From Octopus bimaculoides (lineage: Eukaryota), in assembly GCF_001194135.2 (NCBI RefSeq), contig NC_068981.1, forward strand, positions 199,746,515-199,810,514: a stretch of 64,000 nt of DNA, in the 5' to 3' direction. A program made the position numbers and the translations under genes. Every line of letters begins with the position of its first letter. The stretch's first letter is position 1. Shown one piece after another: positions 6,846 through 54,094 of this stretch. Below the pieces are notes generated by a model, which saw only the letters and a program-made list of their open reading frames with translations, did not search any database and was not told the origin of the DNA.

Positions 6846-7697
6846 CAGAGTGTGGTGAATAAACTGTCATCTAAATTACACAAAAATGAAAATAACATTG
6901 ACATCTCATTTTAACAGATATATTTAGCAAAATTGTGTAAAAATACCTTGAAATACGAAAGAGTAAATTTATTCAATAAAATTGCCATTGGCTTCAACCA
7001 TGGTTTCCAGACTTCTTTCGAATCTCGTGCAACTCTTCTGGACAGTCTCCTTGTTTAAGCTGGTGAATGCTGCCATAATCCTTGCCTTCAGTTCATCTTT
7101 GGTGTTACAAGGAGTTTTGTTGGTCTCTCGCTCAACTACACCCCACACAAAATAATCAAGAAGATTACAGTCAGGGAAGTTAGGTGGCCAGATGTTAGGG
7201 GTGATGGTGTCACAGAAATTGTCTGACAGCCAAGACTGGATTCTCCTGCTTGTGTGGCATGGTGCAGAGTCCTGTTGCCAGACACAGGGTCTTCCAGCAG
7301 CCACCCTCTTGACCCAGGACAGCACTACCTCATACAGGCCTGTGTTGAGTCTGAGGCCATGTGGGAAAATAAATGGACACATAACGTAACCATCACTAGT
7401 GATTGCCCTAAACACCATGATGTTGACTGAATGTTTGATTTCTATCACTCTCGGTACATATGTCCTCAGATGGCATTGTCGTCAGATTGAGACCCAAACA
7501 CTCTGAAATGTTTGTATTGGAGCTTATGGTGCAAATGCCAAATAGTCATTTCCAAATTTCTGGCATAGTGAATAGTGTCATGGTGGTGTTTTTCTCACAG
7601 ATGGTGCCCAACTGACCCTACTATAGTTAACAAAATTAAAAACAAACAATGCACATGCACAAAATTAAAAATGGCAACAATTTACCCATCAGCCTTG
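6846..7697 (-). mobile_element. Internally deleted Tc1/mariner-superfamily transposon, DD37D (maT-type) transposase C-terminus
   Basis: ORF 6969-7448: WQQDSAPCHTS...WPPNFPDCNLLDYFVWG with 37 residues between the second and third Asp; begins ta|cagagtgtggtgaataa at about 6846; right TIR degenerate. Confidence 0.8.
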
Positions 7698-14669: not shown

Positions 14670-16514
14670 TTATGTTTCACAATTGAAAAGTTTCACTCCA
14701 GTGTGTATTTGTTTGTGTGCTTTTAAGAGATTGTTAGTGATAAAAGATTTCCCACACAGATCACAATAATAAGGTCTTTCTCCAGTGTGGATTCTTTTAT
14801 GGACTAAAAGACTGCAATTGACAGAGAAAGATTTGCCACAAATGTCACAGTGAAATGGTTTTTCTCCAGTGTGGCTACGTATATGGATAACAAGACTTGA
14901 ATTATTAATGAAATATTTACCACATATCCCACAATGAAACAATTTCTCTCCACTGTGTATCCTTTTGTGACTGGTTAAATAGCTATTATCGACAAAAGAT
15001 TTACCACATATATCACAATGATATGGTTGTTCTCCAGTGTGTATCCGTGTATGTCTTTTTAATTTACTGTTAGAGACAAAAGACTTGTCACATATTCCAC
15101 AGTGATAAGGTTTTTCTCCTGTGTGACTTCGTATGTGAATAACAAGACTTGAATTTTGAATGAAAGATTTGCCACATATATCACAATAAAATGATTTTTC
15201 ACCAGTGTGGATTCTCTTGTGTTTCCTTAAATCACTGTTATAAACGAAAAATTTCCCACATATATCACAGTGGAAAGGTTTTATTCCAGTGTGTATTTCT
15301 TTGTGTCTGGCTAAATTACTGTCAGAGACTAAATACTTGCCACATATATCACAGTGAAATGGTTTTTCTCCAGTGTGACTTCGGATATGGATAATTAATT
15401 TTGCATTATTCATGAAGGATTTTCCACAGATTTCACAGTGGTATGGTTTCTCTCCACTGTGTAATCTTTTGTGTGTTGTTAAATAGCTGTTATCAACAAA
15501 ATACTTCCCACATATATCACACTGATACGGTTTCTCTCCAGTATGACTACGAATGTGTATAACAAGTTTTGAATTACTCATCAATGATTTCCCGCATATC
15601 TGACAGTGGTAGGTTTTCTCTCCAGTGTGGATTCTTCTGTGTTTTGCCAAACTACTATTATCAATAAAAGATTTCTCACATAACCCACAGTGATAGGGTC
15701 TTTCTCCAGTGTGGATTCTTTTGTGTTTTGTTAAATCACTTTTGCAAATAAAAGATTTTCCACATGTTTCACACTGAAACGGTTTCTCTCCAGTGTGGAT
15801 TCTCTTATGACTTGTTAAATAACTATTATCAAAAAAAGATTTGCCACATATATCACAGTGATAAGGTTTTTCTCCAGTGTGACTGCGTATATGGATGACA
15901 AGATTTGATTTATTAATAAAAGATTTCCCACAGATTTCACAACAGTATGGCCTTTCTCCAGTGTGGATTCTATTATGCCTTGACAAACTACTATTGTCGA
16001 CAAAAGATTTCCCACATATATCACAGTGATAAGGTTTCTCGCCAGTATGAATTCTTTTGTGTCTTGTTATTTTACTGAGTGAAACAAAACATTTCCCACA
16101 TACATCACAATGGTAGGATTTCTCTTCAGTGTGGATTCTCTTGTGTCTTCTTAACTTGCTGTTCGACACGTAAGACTTCCCACATACTTCACAGTGAAAT
16201 GGTTTTTCTCCAGCGTGGATTATTTTGTGACGTTTTAACTTATTGCAATTTACAAAATACTTCCCACAGATTTCACAGTTAAAGAGTTTTCCTTTGTCAT
16301 GTATTTCTTTGTGTGTAAAGACTTCCTCTTCTGAAGAAAATGTCTCCTTACAAATCTCACAGCAATATTCAGTTAAGTTTTTGTCTGGCGATGTTTGTTT
16401 AGTAAATGTTTCACTAGATAAAGATTTCTCACCACTGCATGTTTCTGTTACTGAATCGATATTGTTAAAAACAGGTGCGTTATTAAAAGTGTCCAAGGGA
16501 TTAACGTCTTCCAT
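14670..16514 (-). CDS. Poly-C2H2 zinc-finger protein, 614 aa, 20 fingers, MEDVNPL-leader subfamily (paralogue A)
   Basis: Uninterrupted ORF; about 50-aa leader, then 20 C-x2-C-x12-H-x3-H units with TGEKP-type linkers; an in-frame TAA 24 nt upstream of the ATG supports this start; no KRAB/BTB/SCAN domain recognisable. Confidence 0.95.
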
Positions 16515-16644: not shown

Positions 16645-17299
16645 CATTTAAATACTTGTGGCATACGCGGTCCTCTCCACATCTGCTGTTGTAGACAAAA
16701 TACTTCTTTCTCTATGTTAAAAAATGTGGAGAGGGTTAATGGATAATAAGTGGGGGAAATAAATTAAAATAATAATAAAGAGAGAACGAGGATCCATAAA
16801 GAAGTGATAGAAGAGATTATGGTGAAAATAATGTTTTTTTCTGTAATAGTTTGTAAAGGAAAGGTTTTCATTAAACAAGGAAAACAAAAACCTGATGTTG
16901 TAAATAGAAAAAAGGTGTGTGTGTGTGTGTGTGTTCAATACAGGATGTTTGTATATATATATATATATTTATATATGTGTGTGTGTGTGCATGGAGAGTC
17001 AATAAATCAGTATTCACGAATAGTGAAAGAGTAGAGAAAACGTTCTGTGGTAGCAATACAAATATAATCCGCGATCTTCAGTTAAAAAGTTTCTGCTTCT
17101 CAGTTGTTGGGGATCCTTTGTTCCCTGTAAAATAGGGAGGCAAATAATTTAAGGTTGGACTAGTTTCTAACGAAATAAGATATTTAATCTGGCAGATGTA
17201 AGAAAAGCGGATCTTAAAGATGTTATCCACAAACATTAATATTCATCTTAACACCAGATAATTACTAGACATGATGCAGTCTTAATGAACTGAACTAAT

Positions 17300-17385
17300 T
17301 ACACCAGCGGTGCTATGGAAAATGATTCCCTTGTGTGAATGATACCGGCGTCATAACTTAAAAGTCCCCGACATAATTTAAGATA
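17300..17385 (-). promoter_or_regulatory. Conserved upstream block shared by the three MEDVNPL paralogues
   Basis: ggggacttttaa-gttatgacgccggtatc...aagggaa...gcaccgct aligns with 35339-35415 (-) and 53888-53960 (+). Confidence 0.55.
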
Positions 17386-20311: not shown

Positions 20312-22300
20312 GCACATTTGTGGGTTAGATTTTGTCTTTGTGTACTTTTAATCACCCGTGGTACTCCAGACCAGCACCTCCAACACTTAACCCGGCTGTT
20401 CATGTGCCTATGTTCCTATGACGTGAAAATCAATCCAGCTAAGTGTGTCTTTGGTTCTACCAGACTGGAATTCTTGGGACACCTAATCAATGCTGATGGT
20501 ATTTATCTACTTCCCTATAAAGTGAAAGTCATCAAACGCTTGTTTCCTCCTGTTTCCTTAAAACAGCTCAGAAATGTTATTGGTGTAATTAATTATTATC
20601 ATCATCGTTTCATTCCTAAATGTGAAGAGAAGTTGCTTCCTTTGACCCAGCACTTGAAAGATCAATGAAAGAAAGACGCACAGATAACGCTGTCTCCTAC
20701 AGCCATCCAAGCTTTTGAATCTGTCAAAGCTGACCTTGCTCAAGCATCCTTCCTCACTCATCCTATTCCGGATGCAAAATTATCACTTACTGTCGATGCA
20801 TCATCATCTGCTAAAAGTGCAGTTTTAGAGCAATCTGTAAACAGCCAAAGCCAGCTATTAGTCTTTTTCTTGTGCCAGCTGAAAAATGCTGAAATGAGAT
20901 AGAGTGTATTTGGTAAAGAACTTTTAGCAATTTACCTGGCATTGAAGCATTTCTCTTATTTTTTGAAGGTAGAGACTTCACGATTTTCTCTGACCACAAA
21001 CTGCTAATGTTTGCTCTCTTTGCAAAAGTGGACTGGTATTTGCCCAGAGAAACAAGGCAATTGGATTATATATCACAGTTCACTGGTGACATTCACCACA
21101 TCGCTGGCATTAACAACATCCTCGCCGACATCTTATGTCACCTGCCTAAAGGTGCATTTTGTCTCCTACTTCGATTGATTTGGTTGAACCAAACTCTCTC
21201 CTTGGATTCTCTGGACATTTCCTCACCACAGTTTTCCTGCTGCAAATTTGAACACCTGCCCCTGCCTTTTTCTGAAGGAATCATTCTCTGTGATGTTTCT
21301 ACCTGGTCACCATGACCCCTCATTCCTGAATGCCACCATCATGCTGTTTTTGAAGCACTGTATTCATTATCACACCCTGACATTGCAGCCACAGTAAAGC
21401 TTGTCTCGGACCACTTTTTCTGGCTGAATATGCGACGGTCTATTACTGCCTGGTCACGTACCTGTCTACCATGTCAGCATTCCAAGGTGCATCATTACAT
21501 GAGAGCACATCTTGGACAGTTCCAGCCAACCGGACACCAGGTTCCATCACATACACATTGACCTGGTTGGTCCTTGGCCAGTCAGTTGCAGATTTACTTA
21601 TATATTGACCTGCATCGACCATTTCTCCAGATGGTCTGAAGCCATCCCTCTCATGGACATTTCTGGGAAACTGTCACCAGAGCACTCGTCCCTGGGTGGA
21701 TATCTCACTTCAGAGTACCCTGATTGTGAACGCCAATTTGAAGCTTACCTGTTCCGTAAGCTTTTGAGATTGCTCAGAGTTCAGCACACCCACACCGCCA
21801 GTTACAATCCCCCCCTGAATGGAATGGTGGGAAGACTCTACTGACAGCTCAAAGCCACTATTCACACAGCTCCTGGCCCTCGTTGTTGGTCTGAGTTTCT
21901 CTCCATTGTTCTGCTAGGGTGCTGCTCAGCTGTCAAGGAGGATTTTGGTCATCCTCCGCTGAGCTCCTGTGTGGCACCACCTTAGCACTTTCTGGACAAA
22001 TGTTGGCGGCCGTCGACTTACCGAATGTAGACCCCACATCTTACGTCATGTGACTCAGGTCATTCTTTGCTGACCGGCCACTGATGCTCCCTCCTGACCA
22101 GTCTATTTCCTCTGCAGTACCTCCAGATATTTCTACCTGGACTCATGTGTTTGTAAGAGATGATGCCATCAAGGGACCACTTGCACCTTCCTACACTGGA
22201 CCCTATCGTGTTCTTAAAAGCACACCCACCAAAACTGTTCACTGTGGACACTCACGGTAAAAAAGAGACTGTCTCTATCGACAGAGTAAAAAAAAGCCTT
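20312..22300 (+). mobile_element. Ty3/Gypsy LTR retrotransposon pol relic (RT C-half, RNase H, integrase), 5'-deleted
   Basis: GLDFVFVY[DD deleted]LITRG..HLQHL..KINPAKCVFG..LEFLGH; VDASS..YS.FGKELLAIY..F.L..SDHK; HPDI..T..LV..HFFW, CLPCQ..K, FHHIHIDLVGP, LTCIDHFSRWSEAIP, YNPPLNGMV, GPLAPSYTGPYRV. Confidence 0.9.
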
Positions 22301-35242: not shown

Positions 35243-35368
35243 CTGAGAAATTCCTGTCAATGTAGACTGCTACGATTCTGTTTACATGATAAAATGACGT
35301 TAATTAAGGCAGATGACGTAATTAAACTAATTGCAAAATAGCGGTGTCATTGATAATTTTTCCCTTAC
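35243..35368 (-). other. Predicted 5'UTR intron of paralogue B (126 nt)
   Basis: Donor GAG|GTAAGG (G at 35368), acceptor TTTCTCAG| 27 nt before the ATG. Confidence 0.55.
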
Positions 35369-35560
35369 CTCAAGGATACCGGTGACACATATTAAAAGTC
35401 CCCTAATGTAATTTAATACATTCAGATTCGGTCAATTATCGTAATTTATTCCGCCACTTGTATCCATCCATTGTAAATGAAATATTGACCAGCTAAATAA
35501 CTATGACATATCAACTGGAGAGTCAATACGACGTTGTTCGAACTGCTAGAAAGTGTGGCT
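35339..35560 (-). promoter_or_regulatory. Conserved upstream block of paralogue B
   Basis: ggggacttttaatatgtgtcaccggtatccttgag, and further upstream ctttctagcagttcg..ttgactctc, both aligning to 53765-53960 (+). Confidence 0.55.
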
Positions 35561-45064: not shown

Positions 45065-46657
45065 TCAGTCATGCAGCTTTTCTCCTCTATGAATATACTT
45101 GTGTTTAATTAAGTTACAATGTTCAGAAAATGGTTTCTTGCAGATCTCACGGGGATGTGGTTTCTTTCTTGTGTGAACGTATTTGTGTTTAGTTAAATTA
45201 TTGGATACAGAGAATGACTTACCACAACGATGTGGCTTCTCTCCTGTATGAATGCGTTTGTGAGAGGATAAACTGCTTGATTCTGTAAATGTTTTACCAC
45301 AAATATTGCAGCGATATGGTTTCTCTCCCGAATGAACACGTTTATGTTTAACTGCATCACCTTTTTCTCCTCTATGAATCCGTTTATGTCTAGATAAGAC
45401 ACTACTTCCAGAGAATGATTTACCACAAATATCACAATATGACTTCCCTCCTGTATGAATGCATTTATGAGTAGTTAAACGATTTAGCCGAGAAAAGGAT
45501 TCACCACACGTACCACAGTGATATGGTTTTTCTCTTGTATGAATATATTTGTGACTACTTAAGTTGCCCCGTGAAGAGAATGATTTATCACAGATATCAC
45601 AACGATATGGTTTTTCTCCTGTATGAATATATCTGTGATCGGTTAACTCACCACTTACAGAGAATGATTTACCACAAATATCACAATAATATGGTTTTTC
45701 TCCTGTATGAGTTCGTTCATGATTAGTTAAGATACTACGTTGTGAGAATGATTTACCACAGATATCACAATGATATGATTTATCAACTTCATGAACATGT
45801 TTGTGAGTAGACAAACTACTTCCTGTAGAGAATGATTTACCACAGATATCACAGTGATATGGTTTTTCTCCAGTATGAATATATCTGTGAGTTGTTAACA
45901 CACCACTTCCAGAGAATGATTTACCACAAATATCACATTGATATGGTTTTTCTCCTGTATGAGTTCGTTTGTGAATAGTTAAGTTACTACGTTGTGAGAA
46001 TGATTTACCACAGATATCACAATGATATGATTTATCTACATCATGAACATGTTTGTGAGTAGACAAACTACTTCCTGTAGAGAATGATTTACCACAGATA
46101 TTACAGTGATATGGTTTCTCTCCAGTATGAATGCGTTTGTGTGCAAGTACGCTATTTCTACGAGAGAATGACTTACCACAGATATCACAATGGTATGGCT
46201 TCTCTCCTGTATGGGTGCGTTTGTGAGAAGCTAAATTAGTTGCTACAGTAAATGATTTACCACAGATATTGCAGACATATGGCTTTTCTCCTGTATGGGA
46301 TCGTTTGTGAACAGTTAGGTAACTTGCTTGAGAAAATAACTTACCACAGATATCACAATCAAATGTCTTCTCTCCGTGAATTCGTTTGTGAGCAGTTAAG
46401 TTACTTTTTTGTGAGAAAGATTTAGAGCAGACATCACAGTGATAAGGCTTTTCTCCTCTATGAATGCATTTGTGAGCAGTTAAGTTGCTACTTTTAGAGA
46501 TTGATTCACCACAGATATCACAGTAAAATAGTTTTTCTCCTGTGTGAATACGTTTAGTAGTTAGATTACCTTTTATAGCAAATGACTTTTTACAGATATC
46601 AGTATTTGTAGACTGTGCTTTACATCTAATCTTGTTTTTGCTTAAATAATTTTCCAT
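45065..46657 (-). CDS. Poly-C2H2 zinc-finger protein, 530 aa, 15 intact plus 4 degenerate fingers, different subfamily (no MEDVNPL leader)
   Basis: Uninterrupted ORF; includes a 252-bp tandem 3-finger duplication; candidate upstream acceptor attatttcag| at 46960. Confidence 0.9.
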
Positions 46658-48098
46658 AATTTTCCTTTTCTCACCAATGATATACTTTTATTTTTCAAGT
46701 TTTTCTTAGTGCTGTATTTCCACCAGTTCTGATCTTTGATTGTATCATAAGCTGTAACTTCATTGTAAATTTGTCCAAGTGTACTTAGTAAACGTTCCAG
46801 TCAGATAAGTACAGCAACATTGCTAATCTTAGTTCACAGGAAATATCTGACTGCAATTCTTCCAAAGATTTACATCAACACAACTGTATGTGTTTGGTCT
46901 AACATTTTTCTATAGATTTTTAAAAGATGATACTTTTGAAATTCTTCAATTCCAATATTCTGAAATAATAGAAACAATATAAAATATAATGGATATCAAA
47001 ACATTAGAGATTCAACATTGGACATTTTACTAAGTTTCTCATATGAGAAATAGAATAAACCTTGGTTGTTTGATTGATTGAATCACTTGCTAATTAGAAA
47101 GTAAACGAGTATCTCAGACACAAGCACCCTCATCATGACAGTCTGTGATAAGGCTACAATCACACGTACAATTCACCTAACTTTCACACAGTTTCTGTCT
47201 CTCTAATTTCACCCACAAAGTTTGGATCAATCCAAGGCTTACAGTAAAAGACACTTGCCCAAGATGCTATACAGTGGGACAGGATCCAAGACTACAAGAT
47301 TGTGATGTGAACTTGTTAACCATTTGGCCATACTGTGCTTAAAATACTGATAAACTGTAGAAACAAGCATTTACTTCAACTACTGAGTTTTACATTATAA
47401 TTTATTATCAAAATTACATCATCCAACTTTGTGTGAAGTGTATCTATTTAGACTATACCTACACCTTCAGACTGCATGACATTAAATGTTAAACTACAAA
47501 TGTGGGATAGCCCTGGACCGACCCTTACACAACCTGTTTCATCCCTCTTACTACACTGTCCAATCTTTTGTCATTAACCCATTGACACTAATCCCTTCTT
47601 TTTAACATGTCCCTTGCATACTCCTATTATTTTCTTCCAACCAAAAGTGACAACTCTGTTAATCTCTCCACTACCACCTTCTCACAACTATAAATCTGTA
47701 CTTCTCATCACACTTTACCCTCTCTTATTGTGCACACACACACACATTCTCTCCCTCTCCTATTCTCTTTCAGTGATAGGGGTCTTTATAGGCTCCTTAG
47801 TCTTGCAAGATAATCTCATTTATGCTTTACCAATTGTTTTCATAATTGTGATGCTTGTATAATCTGACCCGTGACAAATAATAGGCTGTTCATTTGATGT
47901 CTTTTTATTAAAAATAAAAAATATTATTTATTTTGTTTAGAAAAAACTCTCATAGGATCCACTAGTCACGACTAGCTAAAGCGGATGCGCGAGTACGCGC
48001 ACCGAGACCACTCTCAAAACGAAAGATCGCCCCCTGACCTCCTAATATGCTGCAAACTCCTTATTTTTGTTCGGAAAAGGTGGGGAAACCGGACCCCC

Positions 48099-49203
48099 GG
48101 TACTATCCAAGAAGAGTGGTCCCGGTGCGCATCCGCGCTAGCTAGTCGTGACTAGTCGATCCTACGACTACCTAGCGCGAGTGCGCGTCATGCGCAAAAC
48201 ATGTCTGAGGGTTTTTTCTAAACAAAGTAAAAAAATTATACACTACCTGTTTTTGGTAAAGAGTCCATTAAAAAGTCGGGCACTATCATGCTATTAGCTG
48301 TCAGAAGTGAAAGTGCTCACTGCTAGTGAAGTATCTGTCTGTCTGCCTGCATGCCTGTCGATTCTTTGGCTACTGACAGCTAATACCATGACTGGCCGGA
48401 GCGAGCTATCTGTCTGTCTGTCTCTCTATCTATCTATCTATTTATCTATTACTCGAAAGTTCGCGCGTCCGCGCTAGCTAGTCGTGAGCTGAAAACACAA
48501 ATTTAATATAAAAACATATTTCCTGAAATTGCAAATTATTTAAAATATAAAAATATAATTTTCAACAGAGAGAATTTATCAAAATAGAAAACAAATGAAG
48601 TTTGAAGTTTAAAAATAATAGGATCGACCACTCACGACTAGCTAGCGCGGACGCGCGAACTTTCGAGTAATAGATAGAGAGAGATAGAGAGACAGACAGA
48701 CATATAGCTCGCTCCGGCCAGTCATGGTATTAGCTGTCAGTAGCCAAAGAATCAACAGGCAGATACTTCACTAGCAGTGAGCACTTTCACTTCTGACAGC
48801 TAATAGCATGATAGTGCCAAAAGTCGGTCTTTTAAAATCGACTGTTGTTCAATGGTATCAGTACAAGTAATTATCTTTTGCGTAACCCCTACCAAATTGG
48901 TGGACTTGGGCACATCGTAGAAATAGATGAATCTATGATGTGCAAATACAATGGAGGATGGGATAGAGGGGATAAAAATAGGTTTTTTAGTCTTTGTACC
49001 TGACCGTTCTTCTGAAACTCTTCTATCACTTATTAAAAAATTTATCAAACCAGGGACGACTATGTTCTGATCGTTGGGGTGCGTACAATGGGACTCTTTA
49101 CCAAAAACAGGTAGTGTATAATTTATTTACTTTGTTTAGAAAAAACCGTCATACATGTTTTATGCGAGTGCGTGCACCGGGACCACTCTTCTTGAAAAGT
49201 ACC
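48099..49203 (+). mobile_element. Internally deleted Merlin (IS1016/IS1595-like) DNA transposon with long TIRs
   Basis: Termini GGTACTATCCAAGAAGAGTGGTCCCGGTGC / GCACCGGGACCACTCTTCTTGAAAAGTACC; the interior 48841-49090 reads TVVQWYQY..YQIGGLGHIVEIDESMM.KYN / GG.DRG...FLVFVPDRSSETLLSLIKKFIKPGTT / SDRWGAYN (Merlin DDE motifs). No TSD found. Confidence 0.85.
48279..48818. mobile_element. Foldback MITE, Merlin-type (540 bp), nested in the Merlin relic
   Basis: GGCAC...GTGCC ends, arms of about 190-210 bp, AT-rich spacer, perfect 8-bp TSD AAAAGTCG (48271-48278 / 48819-48826). Confidence 0.9.
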
Positions 49204-50460
49204 CTCAAAACGAAAGATCGTCGGTCAGGGTGCTTGATTCCACATTAAAAGTTGTTTCTTTTTTCTCTCTTAGTGAAAATCATGCGGGTGAAAGGTTCAA
49301 TATTTACCGAAATCTATAGTTATGCCGACAGAATCATGTTAATGTTTATAATATTACCCGAAAACGAAATATAAAAAAAAGTGCAACGGGTTTTTTAAAA
49401 AATATCGAAGTTATGAGGGGTTTTAGCACGTGCTTCCATGATAATTCCGCCTGAATACCTTCAATTTTTTAATACTTACAGAAATGATTTATAAAGGATG
49501 ATGCTGTAACTCCGTTTGGTTGTCAGTAGTCATGCTGGATAAATAGTTTTCTCTCCTGACATTCCGCGCTCCATTCATGGCACTTCACGTTGAATTCCCC
49601 TTGCAGATTCTTATAAGAAAACAAGCAAGTCACTTACAGGGACCCTAAAACTATACGAGTTTATTCCGGCTCGGAACATGATTAAAATATCTCAGTGGAA
49701 TTTTACAAAGGTTACAAGAAAGGTAATAATAACAGATCTATCTGGAAATATACAATAGGGGTTTTCTTCGGGTAAAATAAAAAAGAGGAAGTTGAGGAAA
49801 TAACCCTTAAAGATAATCATCCATTTGAGATAGGTTAATAGTTGTTATGGAGAACGTGTTGAATGTGGAGGTCTGGCATAAAATGCTGAGTCGCACAAAT
49901 CCAAATCGGAATCAGCTGAAAGTCAACCGTCAACAGGAATCCTTTGTGGCGCGAAGCCAAAGAGCTGCCACCTATAGGGATCGCCTGTAAACACTTAGCT
50001 ACCAAGGGAGGTTACCCAACCGCGCTGTATACGGATTGATGCGAGCACAACTCTCGCTAAACTATTTGTGCTACAGAAGCAATTTTGAAAACCACAACAC
50101 AATCCAAACACAAGCGAAAATCAAGTCTATTGCACATGCGTATAATATAAGAAAACATAACTCTCGTTATATCCCCTTTTCGGTTTCTCCGTCAAAAACT
50201 ACGTGTACTCCATCCCATGCAGCTGTGGTAGGTTATACAAAGGCGAAACATGCCGTCCCTTCAAAATAAGGGTAGATGAACATAGCAAAGCTTGACACGA
50301 GGAGATATTGATAAATCGGGTATAGCTGATCATGTATGGAAAAATGGAGACCACCTCCCCTTTGTGGGATGAAGTTAAAAAAAAATAGACAGAGAACACC
50401 ACTGGAAAATACGATATTAGATTTTCACTCCATAATTGCCCACGGGTATAAGGCGTAGTG

Positions 50461-50795
50461 TGGAGGCGCAATGGCCCAGTGGTTAGGGCAGCGGACTCGC
50501 GGTTTCGATTCCCAGACCGGGCGTTGTGAGTGTTTATTTAGTGAAAACACCTAAAGCTCCACGAGGCTCCGGCAGGGGATGGTGGCGAACCCTGCTGTAC
50601 TCTTTCTTCCTGTTTCTGTTGTACCTGTATTTCAAAGGGTCGGCTTTGTCACGCTGAATATCCCTGAGAACCACGTTAAGGATACACGTGTCTGTGGAGT
50701 GCTCAGCCACTTGCACGTTAATTTCACGAGCAGGCTGTTCCGTTGATCGGATCAACTGGAACCCTCGACGTCGTAAGCAACGGAGTGCCAACAAC
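50461..50795 (+). mobile_element. tRNA-derived SINE, near full length, ending in (CAA)n
   Basis: Head ggcgcaatggcccagtggttaggg...ggtttcgattccc; flanked by an 11-bp TSD AAGGCGTAGTG (50450-50460 / 50796-50806). Confidence 0.85.
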
Positions 50796-50796
50796 A

Positions 50797-50865
50797 AGGC
50801 GTAGTGGTTAAGAGCGCGGGCGACTAACCCCAAGATTCCGAGTTCGATTCCAGACAGTGACCTGA
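50797..50865 (+). promoter_or_regulatory. tRNA-like Pol III internal promoter (A and B boxes), not a complete tRNA
   Basis: A box GGCGTAGTGG, anticodon-like arm GGG-cgactaa-CCC, B box GAGTTCGATTCC; no acceptor-stem partner. Confidence 0.6.
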
Positions 50866-50935
50866 ATAATAATAATTTCAAAAAATACCTTAGGTTCAAA
50901 ATAATATCACAAAATACATTAGGTTCGAAATTTCC

Positions 50936-50976
50936 CTGATGAAGGCTAGAGGGTATATCAGCCGAAACGTTGTGTT
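50936..50976 (+). ncRNA. Hammerhead ribozyme core (type I, minimal; stem I not formed in this copy)
   Basis: CTGATGA-A-GGCT(loop)AGCC-GAAA-CGTT with palindromic AACGTT stem III; the downstream GTGTT lacks a complementary upstream strand. Confidence 0.5.
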
Positions 50977-51555
50977 AACAAACGAGATGAGGACAAATAT
51001 CTGTCAAATGGGCTTCATTGGCACGCAAACAACACTGGAAAATACGAAAACTAAAATAAGCAGCACATATGCTAGGACACAACAACCTCTTATTTTCTCT
51101 TATTCCTTTCTGTTGAAGAGCATATGTTCGAAACATAAATGCGTAAAACTAATACATTTGGTTGTTGTTCATACACCTGTCTTTGTCTTTTGTTTCTCTA
51201 TAAATTTCAACTACATACAAAAATACTCTGCTAAAGTTGTCGTATTTGTGTAATTCTAACCAATCAATGACGTGTAATTACTGCTGCTGTTTGCGAACAA
51301 CAACTTCCGGGTCCATTGAGAAAACGATGAATGTTCGACAACAAAAATTTGAATTGAAAATCTCCCCTAACAAAACCCTTCTTTAATAACCAAAGATGTT
51401 TTTATAGCAACATAGGTTTGCTGTATCAGGGTTGATTTGAGGCTAAATAACAACAGAATTATTTCTAAGACAGACCAACGACGGCGCCTTTATGTGGTTG
51501 CATGACCTGCGAGAAAAAGTAGCCAAACTCTTTTCATATACAGAATAGAAAAATC

Positions 51556-52131
51556 GGCACTATCATGCTATTAGTTGTCAGAAGTGAAAGTGCTCACTGC
51601 CTGCTAGTGAAGTATCTGCCTGTTGCTGGCCTGTCGATTCTTTGGCTACTGACAGCTAATACCATGACTGGCCGGAGCGAGCTATATGTCTGTCTGTCTG
51701 TCTGTCTCTCTATCTATCTATTTATCTATTACTCGAAAGTTCGCGCGTCCGCGCTAGCTAGTCGTGAGTAGAAAATACAAATTTAATATAAAAACATATT
51801 TCCTGAAATTGCAAATTATTTAAAATATAAAAATATAATTTTCAACAGAGAGAATTTATCAAAATAGAAAACAAATGAAGTTTGAAGTTTAAAAATAATA
51901 GGATCGACCACTCACGACTAGCTAGCGCGGACGCGCGAACTTTCGAGTAATAGATAGATAGATAGAGAGAGAGACAGACAGACAGACATATAGCTCGCTC
52001 CGGCCAGTCATGGTATTAGCTGTCAGTAGCCAAAGAATCGACAGGCCAGCAACAGGCATGCAGGCAGACAGACAGATACTTCACTAGCATTGAGCACTTT
52101 CACTTCTGACAGCTAATAGCATGATAGTGCC
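51556..52131. mobile_element. Second copy of the Merlin-type foldback MITE (576 bp)
   Basis: Same arms and near-identical spacer as 48279-48818; its own perfect 8-bp TSD GAAAAATC (51548-51555 / 52132-52139). Confidence 0.92.
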
Positions 52132-53764
52132 GAAAAATCTCTATCCTGTGATATACACGTAAGAGTCCATCATGTTTGGGAAGAAAGACGGAATGGTCAC
52201 AATTGGGATGTCTTTGATCATATCTGTTTAATCAGATCCAACTCGGGATTAAACGACAAGTGACGAAGGGAACGAGACGAGGCAACGAGAGAGCCTTTAC
52301 CTGGTCTCTCGAGTTGCTAGACGAAAAGACAAAAAGGAAAATGAAATTTCCGTCTTCAAAAAAAAAAAAAATGCAAGTTTATATTATTTTATAATGTTTG
52401 CTTAGGAATTCATTACTTCTAGAAAAGAATAAGACAAAATGGTCATGGCTGGAGCGCCTTTTCTCACAGATCCATTACAATCAGAGCTATCCTGTGGTTA
52501 AAACAATATTCTTCACTGAATGATGAAGCAGCTAAAGTTAAGAAAAGTTGAAAGAACAAAAGACAGCAAGTATCCATATTCCAAATATAAGGATTCCCTT
52601 GACTGGTGTAATTTATTCAGATTTTCGTATGAAATAAATAGAAAATGTTATGGGAACTCGGTACATATTATAGGTATAAAAACCTATGTAGCTATAGAAA
52701 CATCTCTGGTTATCAAAGAAAGGTTTTTGTCAGGGTTTTCTCAATGGACCTGGAAGTTGTTCGCAAACAGCAGCAGTAATTTTCTTCAGCTGAATACACG
52801 TCATTGATTGGTTAAAATTACTCAAATACGACAACTTTAACACGAAATAACTTCTAAAATACAAAATTTTGTCAAAAGCGTTAAGAGTAAATCCTGTTCT
52901 ATGTGATACATTCTACCGAAGTTTCAAAATGTTTAGTTAAAAAGAGTTAATTTAAAAATTTGGCCGTCAGATTGAAAAGATCCCAAGATTCTTCAGTGGT
53001 TGGCACGGCGTCAACTAATTTATACACGTGCAAAAATTGCAATTCGCAATGTTACCTTATTTGTTGTTTAACAGTAAGTTGACTTATGTTCTTTTACTTG
53101 TTATCTCCTTAATTCTTATTTACTTTTTTAATATCTCAACTTCCTGTCCATCACAAAATCGCAGACTACACCATACACGTGAACACAAAAACACAAAATT
53201 CACTTGTGAAGTTGTGAAAAACACTCGCCACCCTGCCTGACGAAGGTCACTTACTGCTAGTTCTCACTACGTACGCAATCATGTGCTGCCATTTGTTGGC
53301 GCGCTACAGAACTAGTTAGGGAAACTTTTTGATACTACCTCGTACATTCATTCACAAATGTTTATATATAGCCGTGTATATAAAGCCGATGACATAAATA
53401 TGTTAATGATCTTTATTTTATTTTTAGATCAAATAAATAATCTTTTATTACATATATAACACATATGTATATGATACAGAGATAGTACAAAAGAAAGATA
53501 AAGAAAAAGGAACACAAAACAAAAAGGGGGAGAAAGAATTGTAAATTCTCGATCTTTCGTGTGTGTTAATTCTTTTTTTATGTGGATTATTTGGAATGAA
53601 TAGTTAAGCCAAGTAAGTGATGTTGTTTGGTCTCAGTTTATCCCGATTGTGAAGTTTACGATGAAGAGAGTGGCAGCCGTTTTTTCTTTTTCTTTTGCAT
53701 TTTTAAAACTATAATGTATCTTTCCTATTATACGTCAACAGTTTTCTTTGTGGGGAAATTAGCT

Positions 53765-53960
53765 GCCCTTTCTAGCAGGTCGCCCAATTATGTTGACACT
53801 CTCACTAATACGTGTTACTTAAATGATTCGATTGAAGGAAGAATCTCATATAACTTCTATTATTTTGAATGCGTTAACGAATGCCTAAAATTGTGTTAGG
53901 GACTTTTACCATATGTCACCGGTGTCATTGAGATGGAGAAAATTTTCAATGACACCACTG
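53765..53960 (+). promoter_or_regulatory. Conserved upstream block of paralogue C
   Basis: tagggacttttaccatatgtcaccggtgtcattgag...tcaatgacaccact; 11-bp inverted repeat 53921-53931 / 53946-53956. Confidence 0.55.
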
Positions 53961-53961
53961 A

Positions 53962-54094
53962 GTAAGTATCTTCATTATTTAGTTAATTTACGTCATGTGT
54001 AGTAATTATTCGAATTATTTCATGTAAACACAGTTCCGTACTATCTGAGACGAGAAACAGAATCCTAATCGATAGCATTCAAAAGCATTTTCAG
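53962..54094 (+). other. Predicted 5'UTR intron of paralogue C (133 nt)
   Basis: Donor TGA|GTAAGT at 53962, acceptor TTTTCAG| at 54094, 27 nt before the MEDVNPL ATG. Confidence 0.5.

What the first reader, a model, noticed from the sequence alone, without database searches (positions are those of the whole stretch)
48279..52131. Young Merlin-type foldback MITE family: two independent insertions 2.7 kb apart
Seen: 540-bp and 576-bp elements with GGCAC termini, about 200-bp arms containing (TCTG)/(TCTA) microsatellites, and near-identical spacers, each with its own perfect 8-bp TSD (AAAAGTCG; GAAAAATC). One sits inside a Merlin relic. Inference: recent mobilisation in trans by an active Merlin transposase, with local hopping into a ZNF promoter region. 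I do not recognise this family, and it may be undescribed.
Basis: partly seen in the sequence, partly recalled or inferred. Interest (0 to 1): 0.7.

Follow-up and report, generated by a model that had tools for sequence, protein, structure and literature searches.

The report
Young Merlin-type MITE pair in octopus
Two copies of one small, non-coding "jumping gene" with long inverted ends sit 2.7 kb apart between zinc-finger genes of the octopus Octopus bimaculoides; they are real and fairly recent insertions, but they are an ordinary example of a known transposon type.

Summary
Elements at 48279-48818 (540 bp) and 51556-52131 (576 bp) begin GGCACTATCATG and end CATGATAGTGCC. Each has its own perfect 8-bp target-site duplication (AAAAGTCG; GAAAAATC) and unrelated flanks. 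An unbiased scan found 959 inverted-repeat candidates in the window, and only these two have a perfect 8-bp duplication.

The window is Octopus bimaculoides, near the end of chromosome CM046601.1, in a C2H2 zinc-finger gene cluster. The copies differ by about 1.2% outside microsatellites, which suggests roughly 1-3 million years.

An 8-bp duplication, 5'-GG termini and roughly 190-220-nt arms fit the published definition of the Merlin superfamily. Copy 1 does sit inside a deleted Merlin element (IS1595-type DDE remnant). That element shares a 38-41-nt GC-rich module with the MITE but has different termini (GGCGATC...).

These points could not be tested with the tools available:
- an autonomous partner with matching termini
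- genome copy number
- insertion polymorphism
- local hopping
- any promoter effect
- whether the family is already catalogued

Verdict: a real, young, Merlin-type long-TIR MITE in a genome already reported as Merlin-rich. It is a new member of a known kind at most, and of low interest.

The parts
48271..48278 (.). Left target-site duplication of copy e1 (AAAAGTCG)
   Evidence: Direct reading. Identical to 48819-48826.
48279..48818 (+). MITE copy e1, 540 bp. Left arm 48279-48488, AT-rich spacer 48489-48630, right arm 48631-48818.
   Evidence: Termini are GGCAC...GTGCC.
48819..48826 (.). Right target-site duplication of e1 (AAAAGTCG)
51548..51555 (.). Left target-site duplication of copy e2 (GAAAAATC)
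51556..52131 (+). MITE copy e2, 576 bp, same orientation as e1. Left arm 51556-51769, spacer 51770-51909, right arm 51910-52131.
   Evidence: As single-stranded DNA it folds into one long hairpin: dG -260 kcal/mol, z = -38.6 against shuffles.
52132..52139 (.). Right target-site duplication of e2 (GAAAAATC)
48287..48304 (+). Terminal 18-nt motif CATGsTATTAGCTGTCAG. It occurs four times per element, outer and inner, and the inner copy is inverted relative to the outer one. Other copies: 48373-48390(-), 48723-48740(+), 48793-48810(-), 51564-51581(+), 51649-51666(-), 52009-52026(+), 52106-52123(-). Inferred to be transposase-binding sites.
   Evidence: 8 matches in the window, 0.01 expected by chance. 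All eight lie inside e1 and e2.
48463..48487 (-). GC-rich module X (TCACGACTAGCTAGCGCGGAyGCGC) at the inner end of each arm. Other copies: 48632-48656(+), 51743-51767(-), 51912-51936(+). It is also present in the ends of the host Merlin relic at 47966-47990(+) and 48127-48151(-).
   Evidence: 6 matches, 0 expected; local alignment score 32-34 against a shuffle maximum of 14-17.
47924..49230 (+). Host element of e1: an internally deleted Merlin element. Right end 49091-49222, followed by GGTCAGGG (49223-49230). Partial left end 48099-48266. An extra inverted copy of the left end at 47924-48031, followed by CCCTGACC (48032-48039). Frameshifted DDE remnant 48823-49067.
   Evidence: 71-nt, 96% inverted repeat 48196-48266 / 49091-49161. 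(Pfam PF12762 DDE_Tnp_IS1595, E = 6.7e-6, 26.6 bits against a cut-off of 27). (86% identity to O. bimaculoides ISXO2-like proteins). (tblastn).

Best explanation
e1 and e2 are two separate insertions of one non-autonomous cut-and-paste DNA transposon family (a long-TIR, hairpin-forming MITE) in the Octopus bimaculoides genome. The family most likely belongs to the Merlin (IS1595/IS1016-like) superfamily.

Mechanism (inferred from what is known of DDE transposases, not shown here):
- A Merlin transposase encoded elsewhere in the genome binds the terminal GGCAC... repeats, possibly also the inner copies of the 18-nt motif.
- It excises the element and inserts it with an 8-bp staggered cut.
- Repair of the cut produces the 8-bp duplications.

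The two copies come from closely related source copies and inserted within the last few million years. One landed in an older, deleted Merlin element. The other landed in an older inverted-repeat structure. Both lie in the 7.4-kb spacer between two divergently oriented C2H2 zinc-finger genes. No function for the host is implied.
For: Shown:
- Exact boundaries, two different perfect 8-bp duplications and unrelated flanks.
- Only these 2 of 959 inverted-terminus candidates in the window have an 8-bp duplication.
- 5'-GG...CC-3' termini and arms of 188-222 nt, within the published Merlin range: TIR 24-462 bp, conserved 5'-GG, 8- or 9-bp duplications (PMC8101967; PMC10045372).
- JC distance 0.012 between the copies outside microsatellites. 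With the 0.0036 substitutions/site/My quoted for this species in PMC13282606, that is about 1.7 My per lineage.
- The genome is O. bimaculoides. It was reported with 191 Merlin sequences, more than any other animal species for which that paper quotes a count (PMC8101967).
- In O. vulgaris, 18 Merlin families were reported and 2 had 'recently active' insertions (PMC13282606).
- A 38-41-nt module is shared at 85-92% identity with the ends of a bona fide Merlin relic that itself shows GG termini and an 8-bp duplication.
- There is no coding capacity. The ORFs are at most 68 aa and have no protein relatives.
Against: - No autonomous Merlin with GGCACTATCATG... termini was found or could be searched for.
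- The only Merlin element in the window has different termini (GGCGATCTTTCG...). Apart from module X it shows no similarity to the MITE arms or spacer.
- Superfamily assignment from duplication length and two terminal bases is conventional but not proof. MuDR/Mutator elements can make 4-10-bp duplications, and by my recollection they often have long inverted ends.
- Only two copies were seen, so the duplication length rests on n = 2.
- Module X could be an independent small palindromic repeat present in both elements rather than a sign of common descent.
Confidence: 0.72

Rival explanations
1. The family is a MITE derived from a Mutator-like (MuDR/MULE) element, mobilised by a MULE transposase. 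The 8-bp duplication lies at the short end of the MULE range.
For: - MuDR/IS256-type elements make 4-10-bp duplications (PMC10045372).
- Long inverted ends of 100-500 nt and G-rich first bases are common in MULEs (my own knowledge).
- In O. vulgaris, Mutator families are more numerous (55 families, 13.9 Mb) than Merlin families (18 families, 2.2 Mb) (supplement of PMC13282606).
Against: - Both copies have exactly 8 bp. By my recollection 9-10 bp is the usual MULE length.
- The shared module X links the family to a Merlin relic, not to a MULE.
- No MULE sequence lies nearby.
Confidence: 0.12
2. The family is a hAT- or P-type MITE. Both superfamilies make 8-bp duplications.
For: The duplications are 8 bp. 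hAT is abundant in octopus: 134 families in O. vulgaris.
Against: - The termini are GGCAC. The usual hAT termini are YARNG (CAG/TAG) and the P terminus is CATG... (my own knowledge).
- Neither duplication fits the hAT nTnnnnAn pattern.
- By my recollection such long arms are unusual for hAT MITEs.
Confidence: 0.06
3. The two copies are one insertion plus a local segmental duplication or gene conversion, not two transposition events.
For: They lie 2.7 kb apart, in the same orientation, and are 98.8% identical outside microsatellites.
Against: - The flanks share no similarity right up to the termini.
- Each copy has its own, different, perfect 8-bp duplication.
- The two copies sit in two different older repeats.
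Confidence: 0.01

Closest known systems
Merlin superfamily MITEs (non-autonomous Merlin elements, Feschotte 2004, as summarised in PMC8101967; Merlin MITEs are also a class in iMITEdb, PMC5199201)
   Same: - 8-bp target-site duplication and 5'-GG termini.
- Inverted ends within the 24-462-bp range.
- Small size: the mean Merlin MITE is about 383 bp in insects.
- No coding capacity.
- The host genome is rich in Merlin transposase sequences.
   Different: - The arms are very long relative to the element (about 75% of its length) and carry tetranucleotide microsatellites.
- Each arm carries a second, inverted copy of the terminal motif.
- No matching autonomous element has been identified.
The deleted Merlin element at 47924-49230 in the same window (relatives: O. 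bimaculoides 'ISXO2-like transposase domain-containing proteins', P0001-P0010)
   Same: - GG termini and an 8-bp duplication (GGTCAGGG).
- The 38-41-nt GC-rich module X lies in the subterminal region.
   Different: - The terminal sequence differs: GGCGATCTTTCG... against GGCACTATCATG....
- No other similarity was found.
- It keeps a frameshifted DDE remnant, which the MITE lacks.
Foldback (FB-type) elements of Drosophila and other animals
   Same: Long inverted arms containing short tandem repeats, and a very stable single-strand hairpin.
   Different: - By my recollection FB arms are built almost wholly of tandem repeat arrays, vary greatly in length, and give 9-bp duplications.
- Here the arms are mostly unique sequence with short microsatellites, and the duplication is 8 bp.

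Membership tests
MITE / non-autonomous TIR transposon | Terminal inverted repeats, with target-site duplications that differ between copies | tested here: met
MITE / non-autonomous TIR transposon | Small size and no transposase gene | tested here: met
   The elements are 540 and 576 bp. Their ORFs are at most 68 aa and have no relatives.
MITE / non-autonomous TIR transposon | Many copies in the genome | not testable with these tools
   Only the 64-kb window is readable, and it holds two copies. A metagenome scan found 0 hits.
Merlin superfamily | 8- or 9-bp target-site duplication | tested here: met
   8 bp in both copies. Definition taken from PMC8101967.
Merlin superfamily | Termini begin 5'-GG | tested here: met
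   GGCAC...GTGCC in both copies
Merlin superfamily | Inverted-end length within the known range (24-462 bp) | tested here: met
   Arms are 188-222 nt
Merlin superfamily | An autonomous relative with the same termini that encodes a DDE_Tnp_IS1595 transposase | not testable with these tools
   - No intact Merlin gene is in the window.
- The octopus Merlin proteins in the database carry no contigs.
- The adjacent Merlin relic has different termini.
Merlin superfamily | Sequence homology to a Merlin element | tested here: inconclusive
   Only a 38-41-nt module (85-92% identity) is shared with the host Merlin relic. The arms and spacer show no significant similarity.
hAT | 8-bp duplication with YARNG termini | tested here: not met
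   The duplication length fits, but the termini are GGCAC. The terminal consensus is from my own knowledge.
Mutator/MuDR | Duplication usually 9-10 bp (range 4-10), with long inverted ends | tested here: inconclusive
   8 bp is within the range quoted in PMC10045372 and the arms are long, but n = 2 and no MULE partner was seen.

The most novel reading that the evidence does not exclude
A Merlin transposase is still active in O. bimaculoides. It moves this MITE preferentially over short distances within the zinc-finger gene clusters, so the family would be a current source of regulatory and structural variation in the expanded octopus ZNF arrays. The doubled, oppositely oriented terminal motif in each arm would be a so far undescribed arrangement of Merlin transposase-binding sites.
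Probability: 0.1. Interest if true: 0.4.

Novelty: new member of a known kind. Interest (0 to 1): 0.15.

Why it matters
It matters little beyond annotation. If the family is missing from repeat libraries, adding its consensus would improve masking of the octopus genome.

A roughly 1%-diverged Merlin-type MITE would also hint that a Merlin transposase was active in the O. bimaculoides lineage within the last few million years. That fits the 'recently active' Merlin families reported for O. vulgaris.

The very stable hairpin could make such sites fragile or hard to assemble. Nothing here bears on a long-standing open question.

Tried and rejected
1. More copies through proteins. The longest ORF of the element (68 aa) has no relatives in the protein collection, so copies cannot be traced that way.
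2. Other copies of the host Merlin family, or an autonomous Merlin with flanks. The octopus Merlin proteins (P0001-P0010) are UniRef-only. P0003 is not on record on any contig. The profile search returned no octopus protein with a contig.
3. An exact-match scan of JGI metagenome contigs with the 25-nt terminus found 0 hits. Bacterial and viral collections were not scanned because they are irrelevant.
4. Rfam and tRNA scans of the region found nothing relevant.
5. Segmental duplication was rejected because the flanks are unrelated and the duplications differ.
6. Extended homology between the MITE arms or spacer and the host Merlin ends was rejected. Scores fell within the shuffle range, except for module X.
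7. A 9-bp duplication reading was rejected because it fails for e2.
Full report
**Where the window comes from**

A 614-aa zinc-finger ORF of the window (14670-16514, minus strand) is encoded on CM046601.1 of assembly GCA_001194135.2. It lies at about 199.76 Mb of a 199.87-Mb chromosome. GCA_001194135 is Octopus bimaculoides (PMC8967140). The nearest relatives of the transposase remnant in the region are UniRef proteins of O. bimaculoides. The window carries several long C2H2 zinc-finger ORFs, assembly gaps (2338 N) and 37% G+C. It is therefore a eukaryotic ZNF gene cluster near a chromosome end.

**The observation**

- e1 is 48279-48818 (540 bp), with AAAAGTCG on both sides.
- e2 is 51556-52131 (576 bp), with GAAAAATC on both sides.
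- Both start GGCACTATCATG and end CATGATAGTGCC.

When the two copies are aligned with 16 nt of flank, similarity stops exactly at these termini. A 9-bp reading of the duplication works for e1 but fails for e2, so the duplication is 8 bp.

In a whole-window scan, 959 pairs had a 14-nt inverted terminus (at most 1 mismatch, 80-3000 bp apart). Only these two have a perfect 8-bp duplication, and none has a 5-, 7-, 9- or 10-bp one. About 0.03 would be expected by chance. The only other blastn matches to the element in the window are short (29-41 nt) stretches in the ends of the element that hosts e1, so there are exactly two copies here.

**Anatomy**

- Each element is one long inverted repeat with an AT-rich spacer of about 140 bp. 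Arms are 48279-48488 / 48631-48818 in e1, and 51556-51769 / 51910-52131 in e2.
- Arm-to-arm differences are almost all indels in microsatellite-like tracts: (TCTG)n/(TCTA)n, confirmed by TRF, and a CCTG-rich stretch.
- As single-stranded DNA, e2 folds into one hairpin of -260 kcal/mol, against -62 ± 5 for shuffles (z = -38.6).
- The 18-nt motif CATGsTATTAGCTGTCAG occurs four times per element. One copy is at each tip. A second copy, inverted relative to the outer one, lies about 95-120 nt inward. There are 8 matches in the window against 0.01 expected. The outer ~120 nt of each arm is thus itself a small palindrome bounded by GGC.../...GCC. I read these motifs as candidate transposase-binding sites. 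That is an inference.
- At the inner end of each arm lies a GC-rich module (X, TCACGACTAGCTAGCGCGGAyGCGC and neighbours).
- The element has no coding capacity. Its longest ORF (68 aa) has no relative in the protein collection.

**Two events, and their age**

The flanks are unrelated and the duplications differ, so these are two insertions and not a local duplication. The two copies lie in the same orientation. Outside microsatellite zones they differ at 5 of about 421 aligned sites (JC 0.012). With the neutral rate of 0.0036 per site per My quoted for O. bimaculoides in PMC13282606, this is about 1.7 My per lineage. That is far younger than the 25- and 56-My repeat bursts reported for the species, but it is not evidence of present activity.

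One 11-nt indel (TGCTGGCCTGT) is present in both arms of e2 and absent from both arms of e1. This suggests either different source copies or homogenisation between the arms.

**The element that hosts e1**

With e1 removed, 48196-48266 and 49091-49161 form a 71-nt, 96% inverted repeat. The sequence between them translates, across frameshifts, to an IS1595/Merlin DDE fragment:
- Pfam PF12762, E = 6.7e-6, 26.6 bits, just under the cut-off of 27.
- 86% identity to about 100-aa 'ISXO2-like transposase domain' proteins of O. bimaculoides.
- A tblastn match to the 202-aa P0008.

It is an internally deleted member of a multi-copy family.

Its right end runs to ...GAAAGATCGTC (49222) and is followed by GGTCAGGG. 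A further copy of the end, in the same orientation, lies at 47924-48031 (...GAAAGATCGCC) and is followed by CCCTGACC, the exact reverse complement. I read this as the true left terminus (5'-GGCGATCTTTCG) with its 8-bp duplication, present as an inverted duplicate. That gives this Merlin element GG termini and an 8-bp duplication too.

Its termini are unlike those of the MITE. Local alignments of the MITE arm and spacer against the three host ends score within the shuffle range. The exception is module X (38-41 nt, 85-92% identity, score 32-34 against a shuffle maximum of 14-17). X is present in two of the three host ends and missing from the third. Whether it marks common descent or a small independent palindromic repeat is open.

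**Classification**

The literature defines Merlin by three features: inverted ends of 24-462 bp, a conserved 5'-GG, and 8- or 9-bp duplications (PMC8101967; PMC10045372). All three were tested here and met.

The fourth and decisive criterion is an autonomous element with the same termini that encodes a DDE_Tnp_IS1595 transposase. It could not be tested:
- The window holds no intact Merlin gene.
- The octopus Merlin proteins in the database have no contigs.
- No tool reads the rest of the octopus genome.

The context favours Merlin. O. bimaculoides was reported with 191 Merlin sequences, more than any other animal species for which that paper quotes a count (PMC8101967). O. vulgaris has 18 Merlin families, two of them with insertions at most 2% diverged (PMC13282606).

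Rivals:
- A MULE-derived MITE. MuDR makes 4-10-bp duplications, has long ends by my recollection, and has more families in octopus. Weight about 0.12.
- hAT or P. The duplication length fits but the termini do not. Weight about 0.06.

I put Merlin at about 0.7.

**Claims that go beyond the evidence**

- 'Local hopping'. The chance of a second copy within 3 kb depends on the copy number N, roughly N x 2.4e-6 for a 2.5-Gb genome. N is unknown, and the scan is biased towards windows where two copies happen to lie together.
- 'ZNF promoter region'. The only upstream sequence conserved among the paralogous ZNF genes is 53879-54030. I read it as a probable 5' exon with a splice donor, matching 35279-35423 and 17258-17382. 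It lies 1.75 kb downstream of e2. e1 is 1.6 kb from the start of the opposite-strand ZNF ORF (45065-46657). Both elements lie in the 7.4-kb spacer between divergent ZNF genes, but no regulatory overlap is shown.
- 'Undescribed'. This cannot be judged without Dfam, Repbase or the published octopus repeat libraries. The supplement of the O. vulgaris repeat paper holds only summary tables.

**Verdict**

This is a real, cleanly bounded, relatively young long-TIR MITE family with Merlin hallmarks, in a genome already known to be Merlin-rich. At most it is a new member of a known kind, and it is of low interest.

Noticed in passing
window 47924-48266 and 49091-49230: The Merlin relic that hosts e1 has three end copies.
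- The extra one (47924-48031) is in the orientation of the right end. It is followed by CCCTGACC, the exact reverse complement of the GGTCAGGG that follows the right end (49223-49230).
- This looks like an inverted duplication of the left terminus together with its 8-bp target-site duplication and about 45 bp of flank. The result is a palindrome whose centre has been partly deleted.
   Followed up: partly
window 47950-47990, 48127-48186, and the inner arms of e1 and e2: A GC-rich module of about 40 nt (TAGGATCsACyAsTCACGACTAGCTAgcGCGGAyGCGCGA) is shared by the MITE and by two of the three ends of the Merlin relic. At 48127-48186 it forms a small hairpin of its own. Whether it is a Merlin subterminal module or a tiny independent palindromic repeat is not resolved.
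   Followed up: partly
window 51229-51419 and 52680-52842: e2 sits between two older inverted-repeat arms (111 nt at 81% and 48 nt at 90% identity), about 1 kb apart once e2 is removed. The arms contain CCAAT-, TGACGTG- and CTTCCGG-like motifs. No other copy exists in the window. This is either an unidentified older transposon or a palindromic regulatory region.
   Followed up: partly
window 53879-54030 (also 35279-35423 and 17258-17382, minus strand): A block of about 150 nt is conserved (69-70% identity) upstream of three paralogous ZNF ORFs that share the N-terminus [24 protein letters not shown]. It ends in a GTAAGT splice-donor-like site, and a ttttcag acceptor-like site lies just before the ORF. 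It is probably a shared 5' exon and proximal promoter.
   Followed up: partly
window 50170-50370 and 50440-50870: Between the two MITE copies lie two other repeat remnants.
- A stretch that translates to a GIY-YIG-like fragment, as found in Penelope-like elements.
- Two tRNA-like SINE head sequences (about 50456-50530 and 50798-50866). ARAGORN does not call them as tRNA genes.
   Followed up: no
window 6969-7448 (minus strand): A 159-aa ORF with a weak DDE_3 match (E = 0.0036). I read it as the C-terminal remnant of a Tc1/mariner-type transposase.
   Followed up: no
window 20318-21844: ORFs that resemble reverse-transcriptase and integrase fragments of an LTR retrotransposon, lying among the ZNF genes. 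They were not searched against any library.
   Followed up: no
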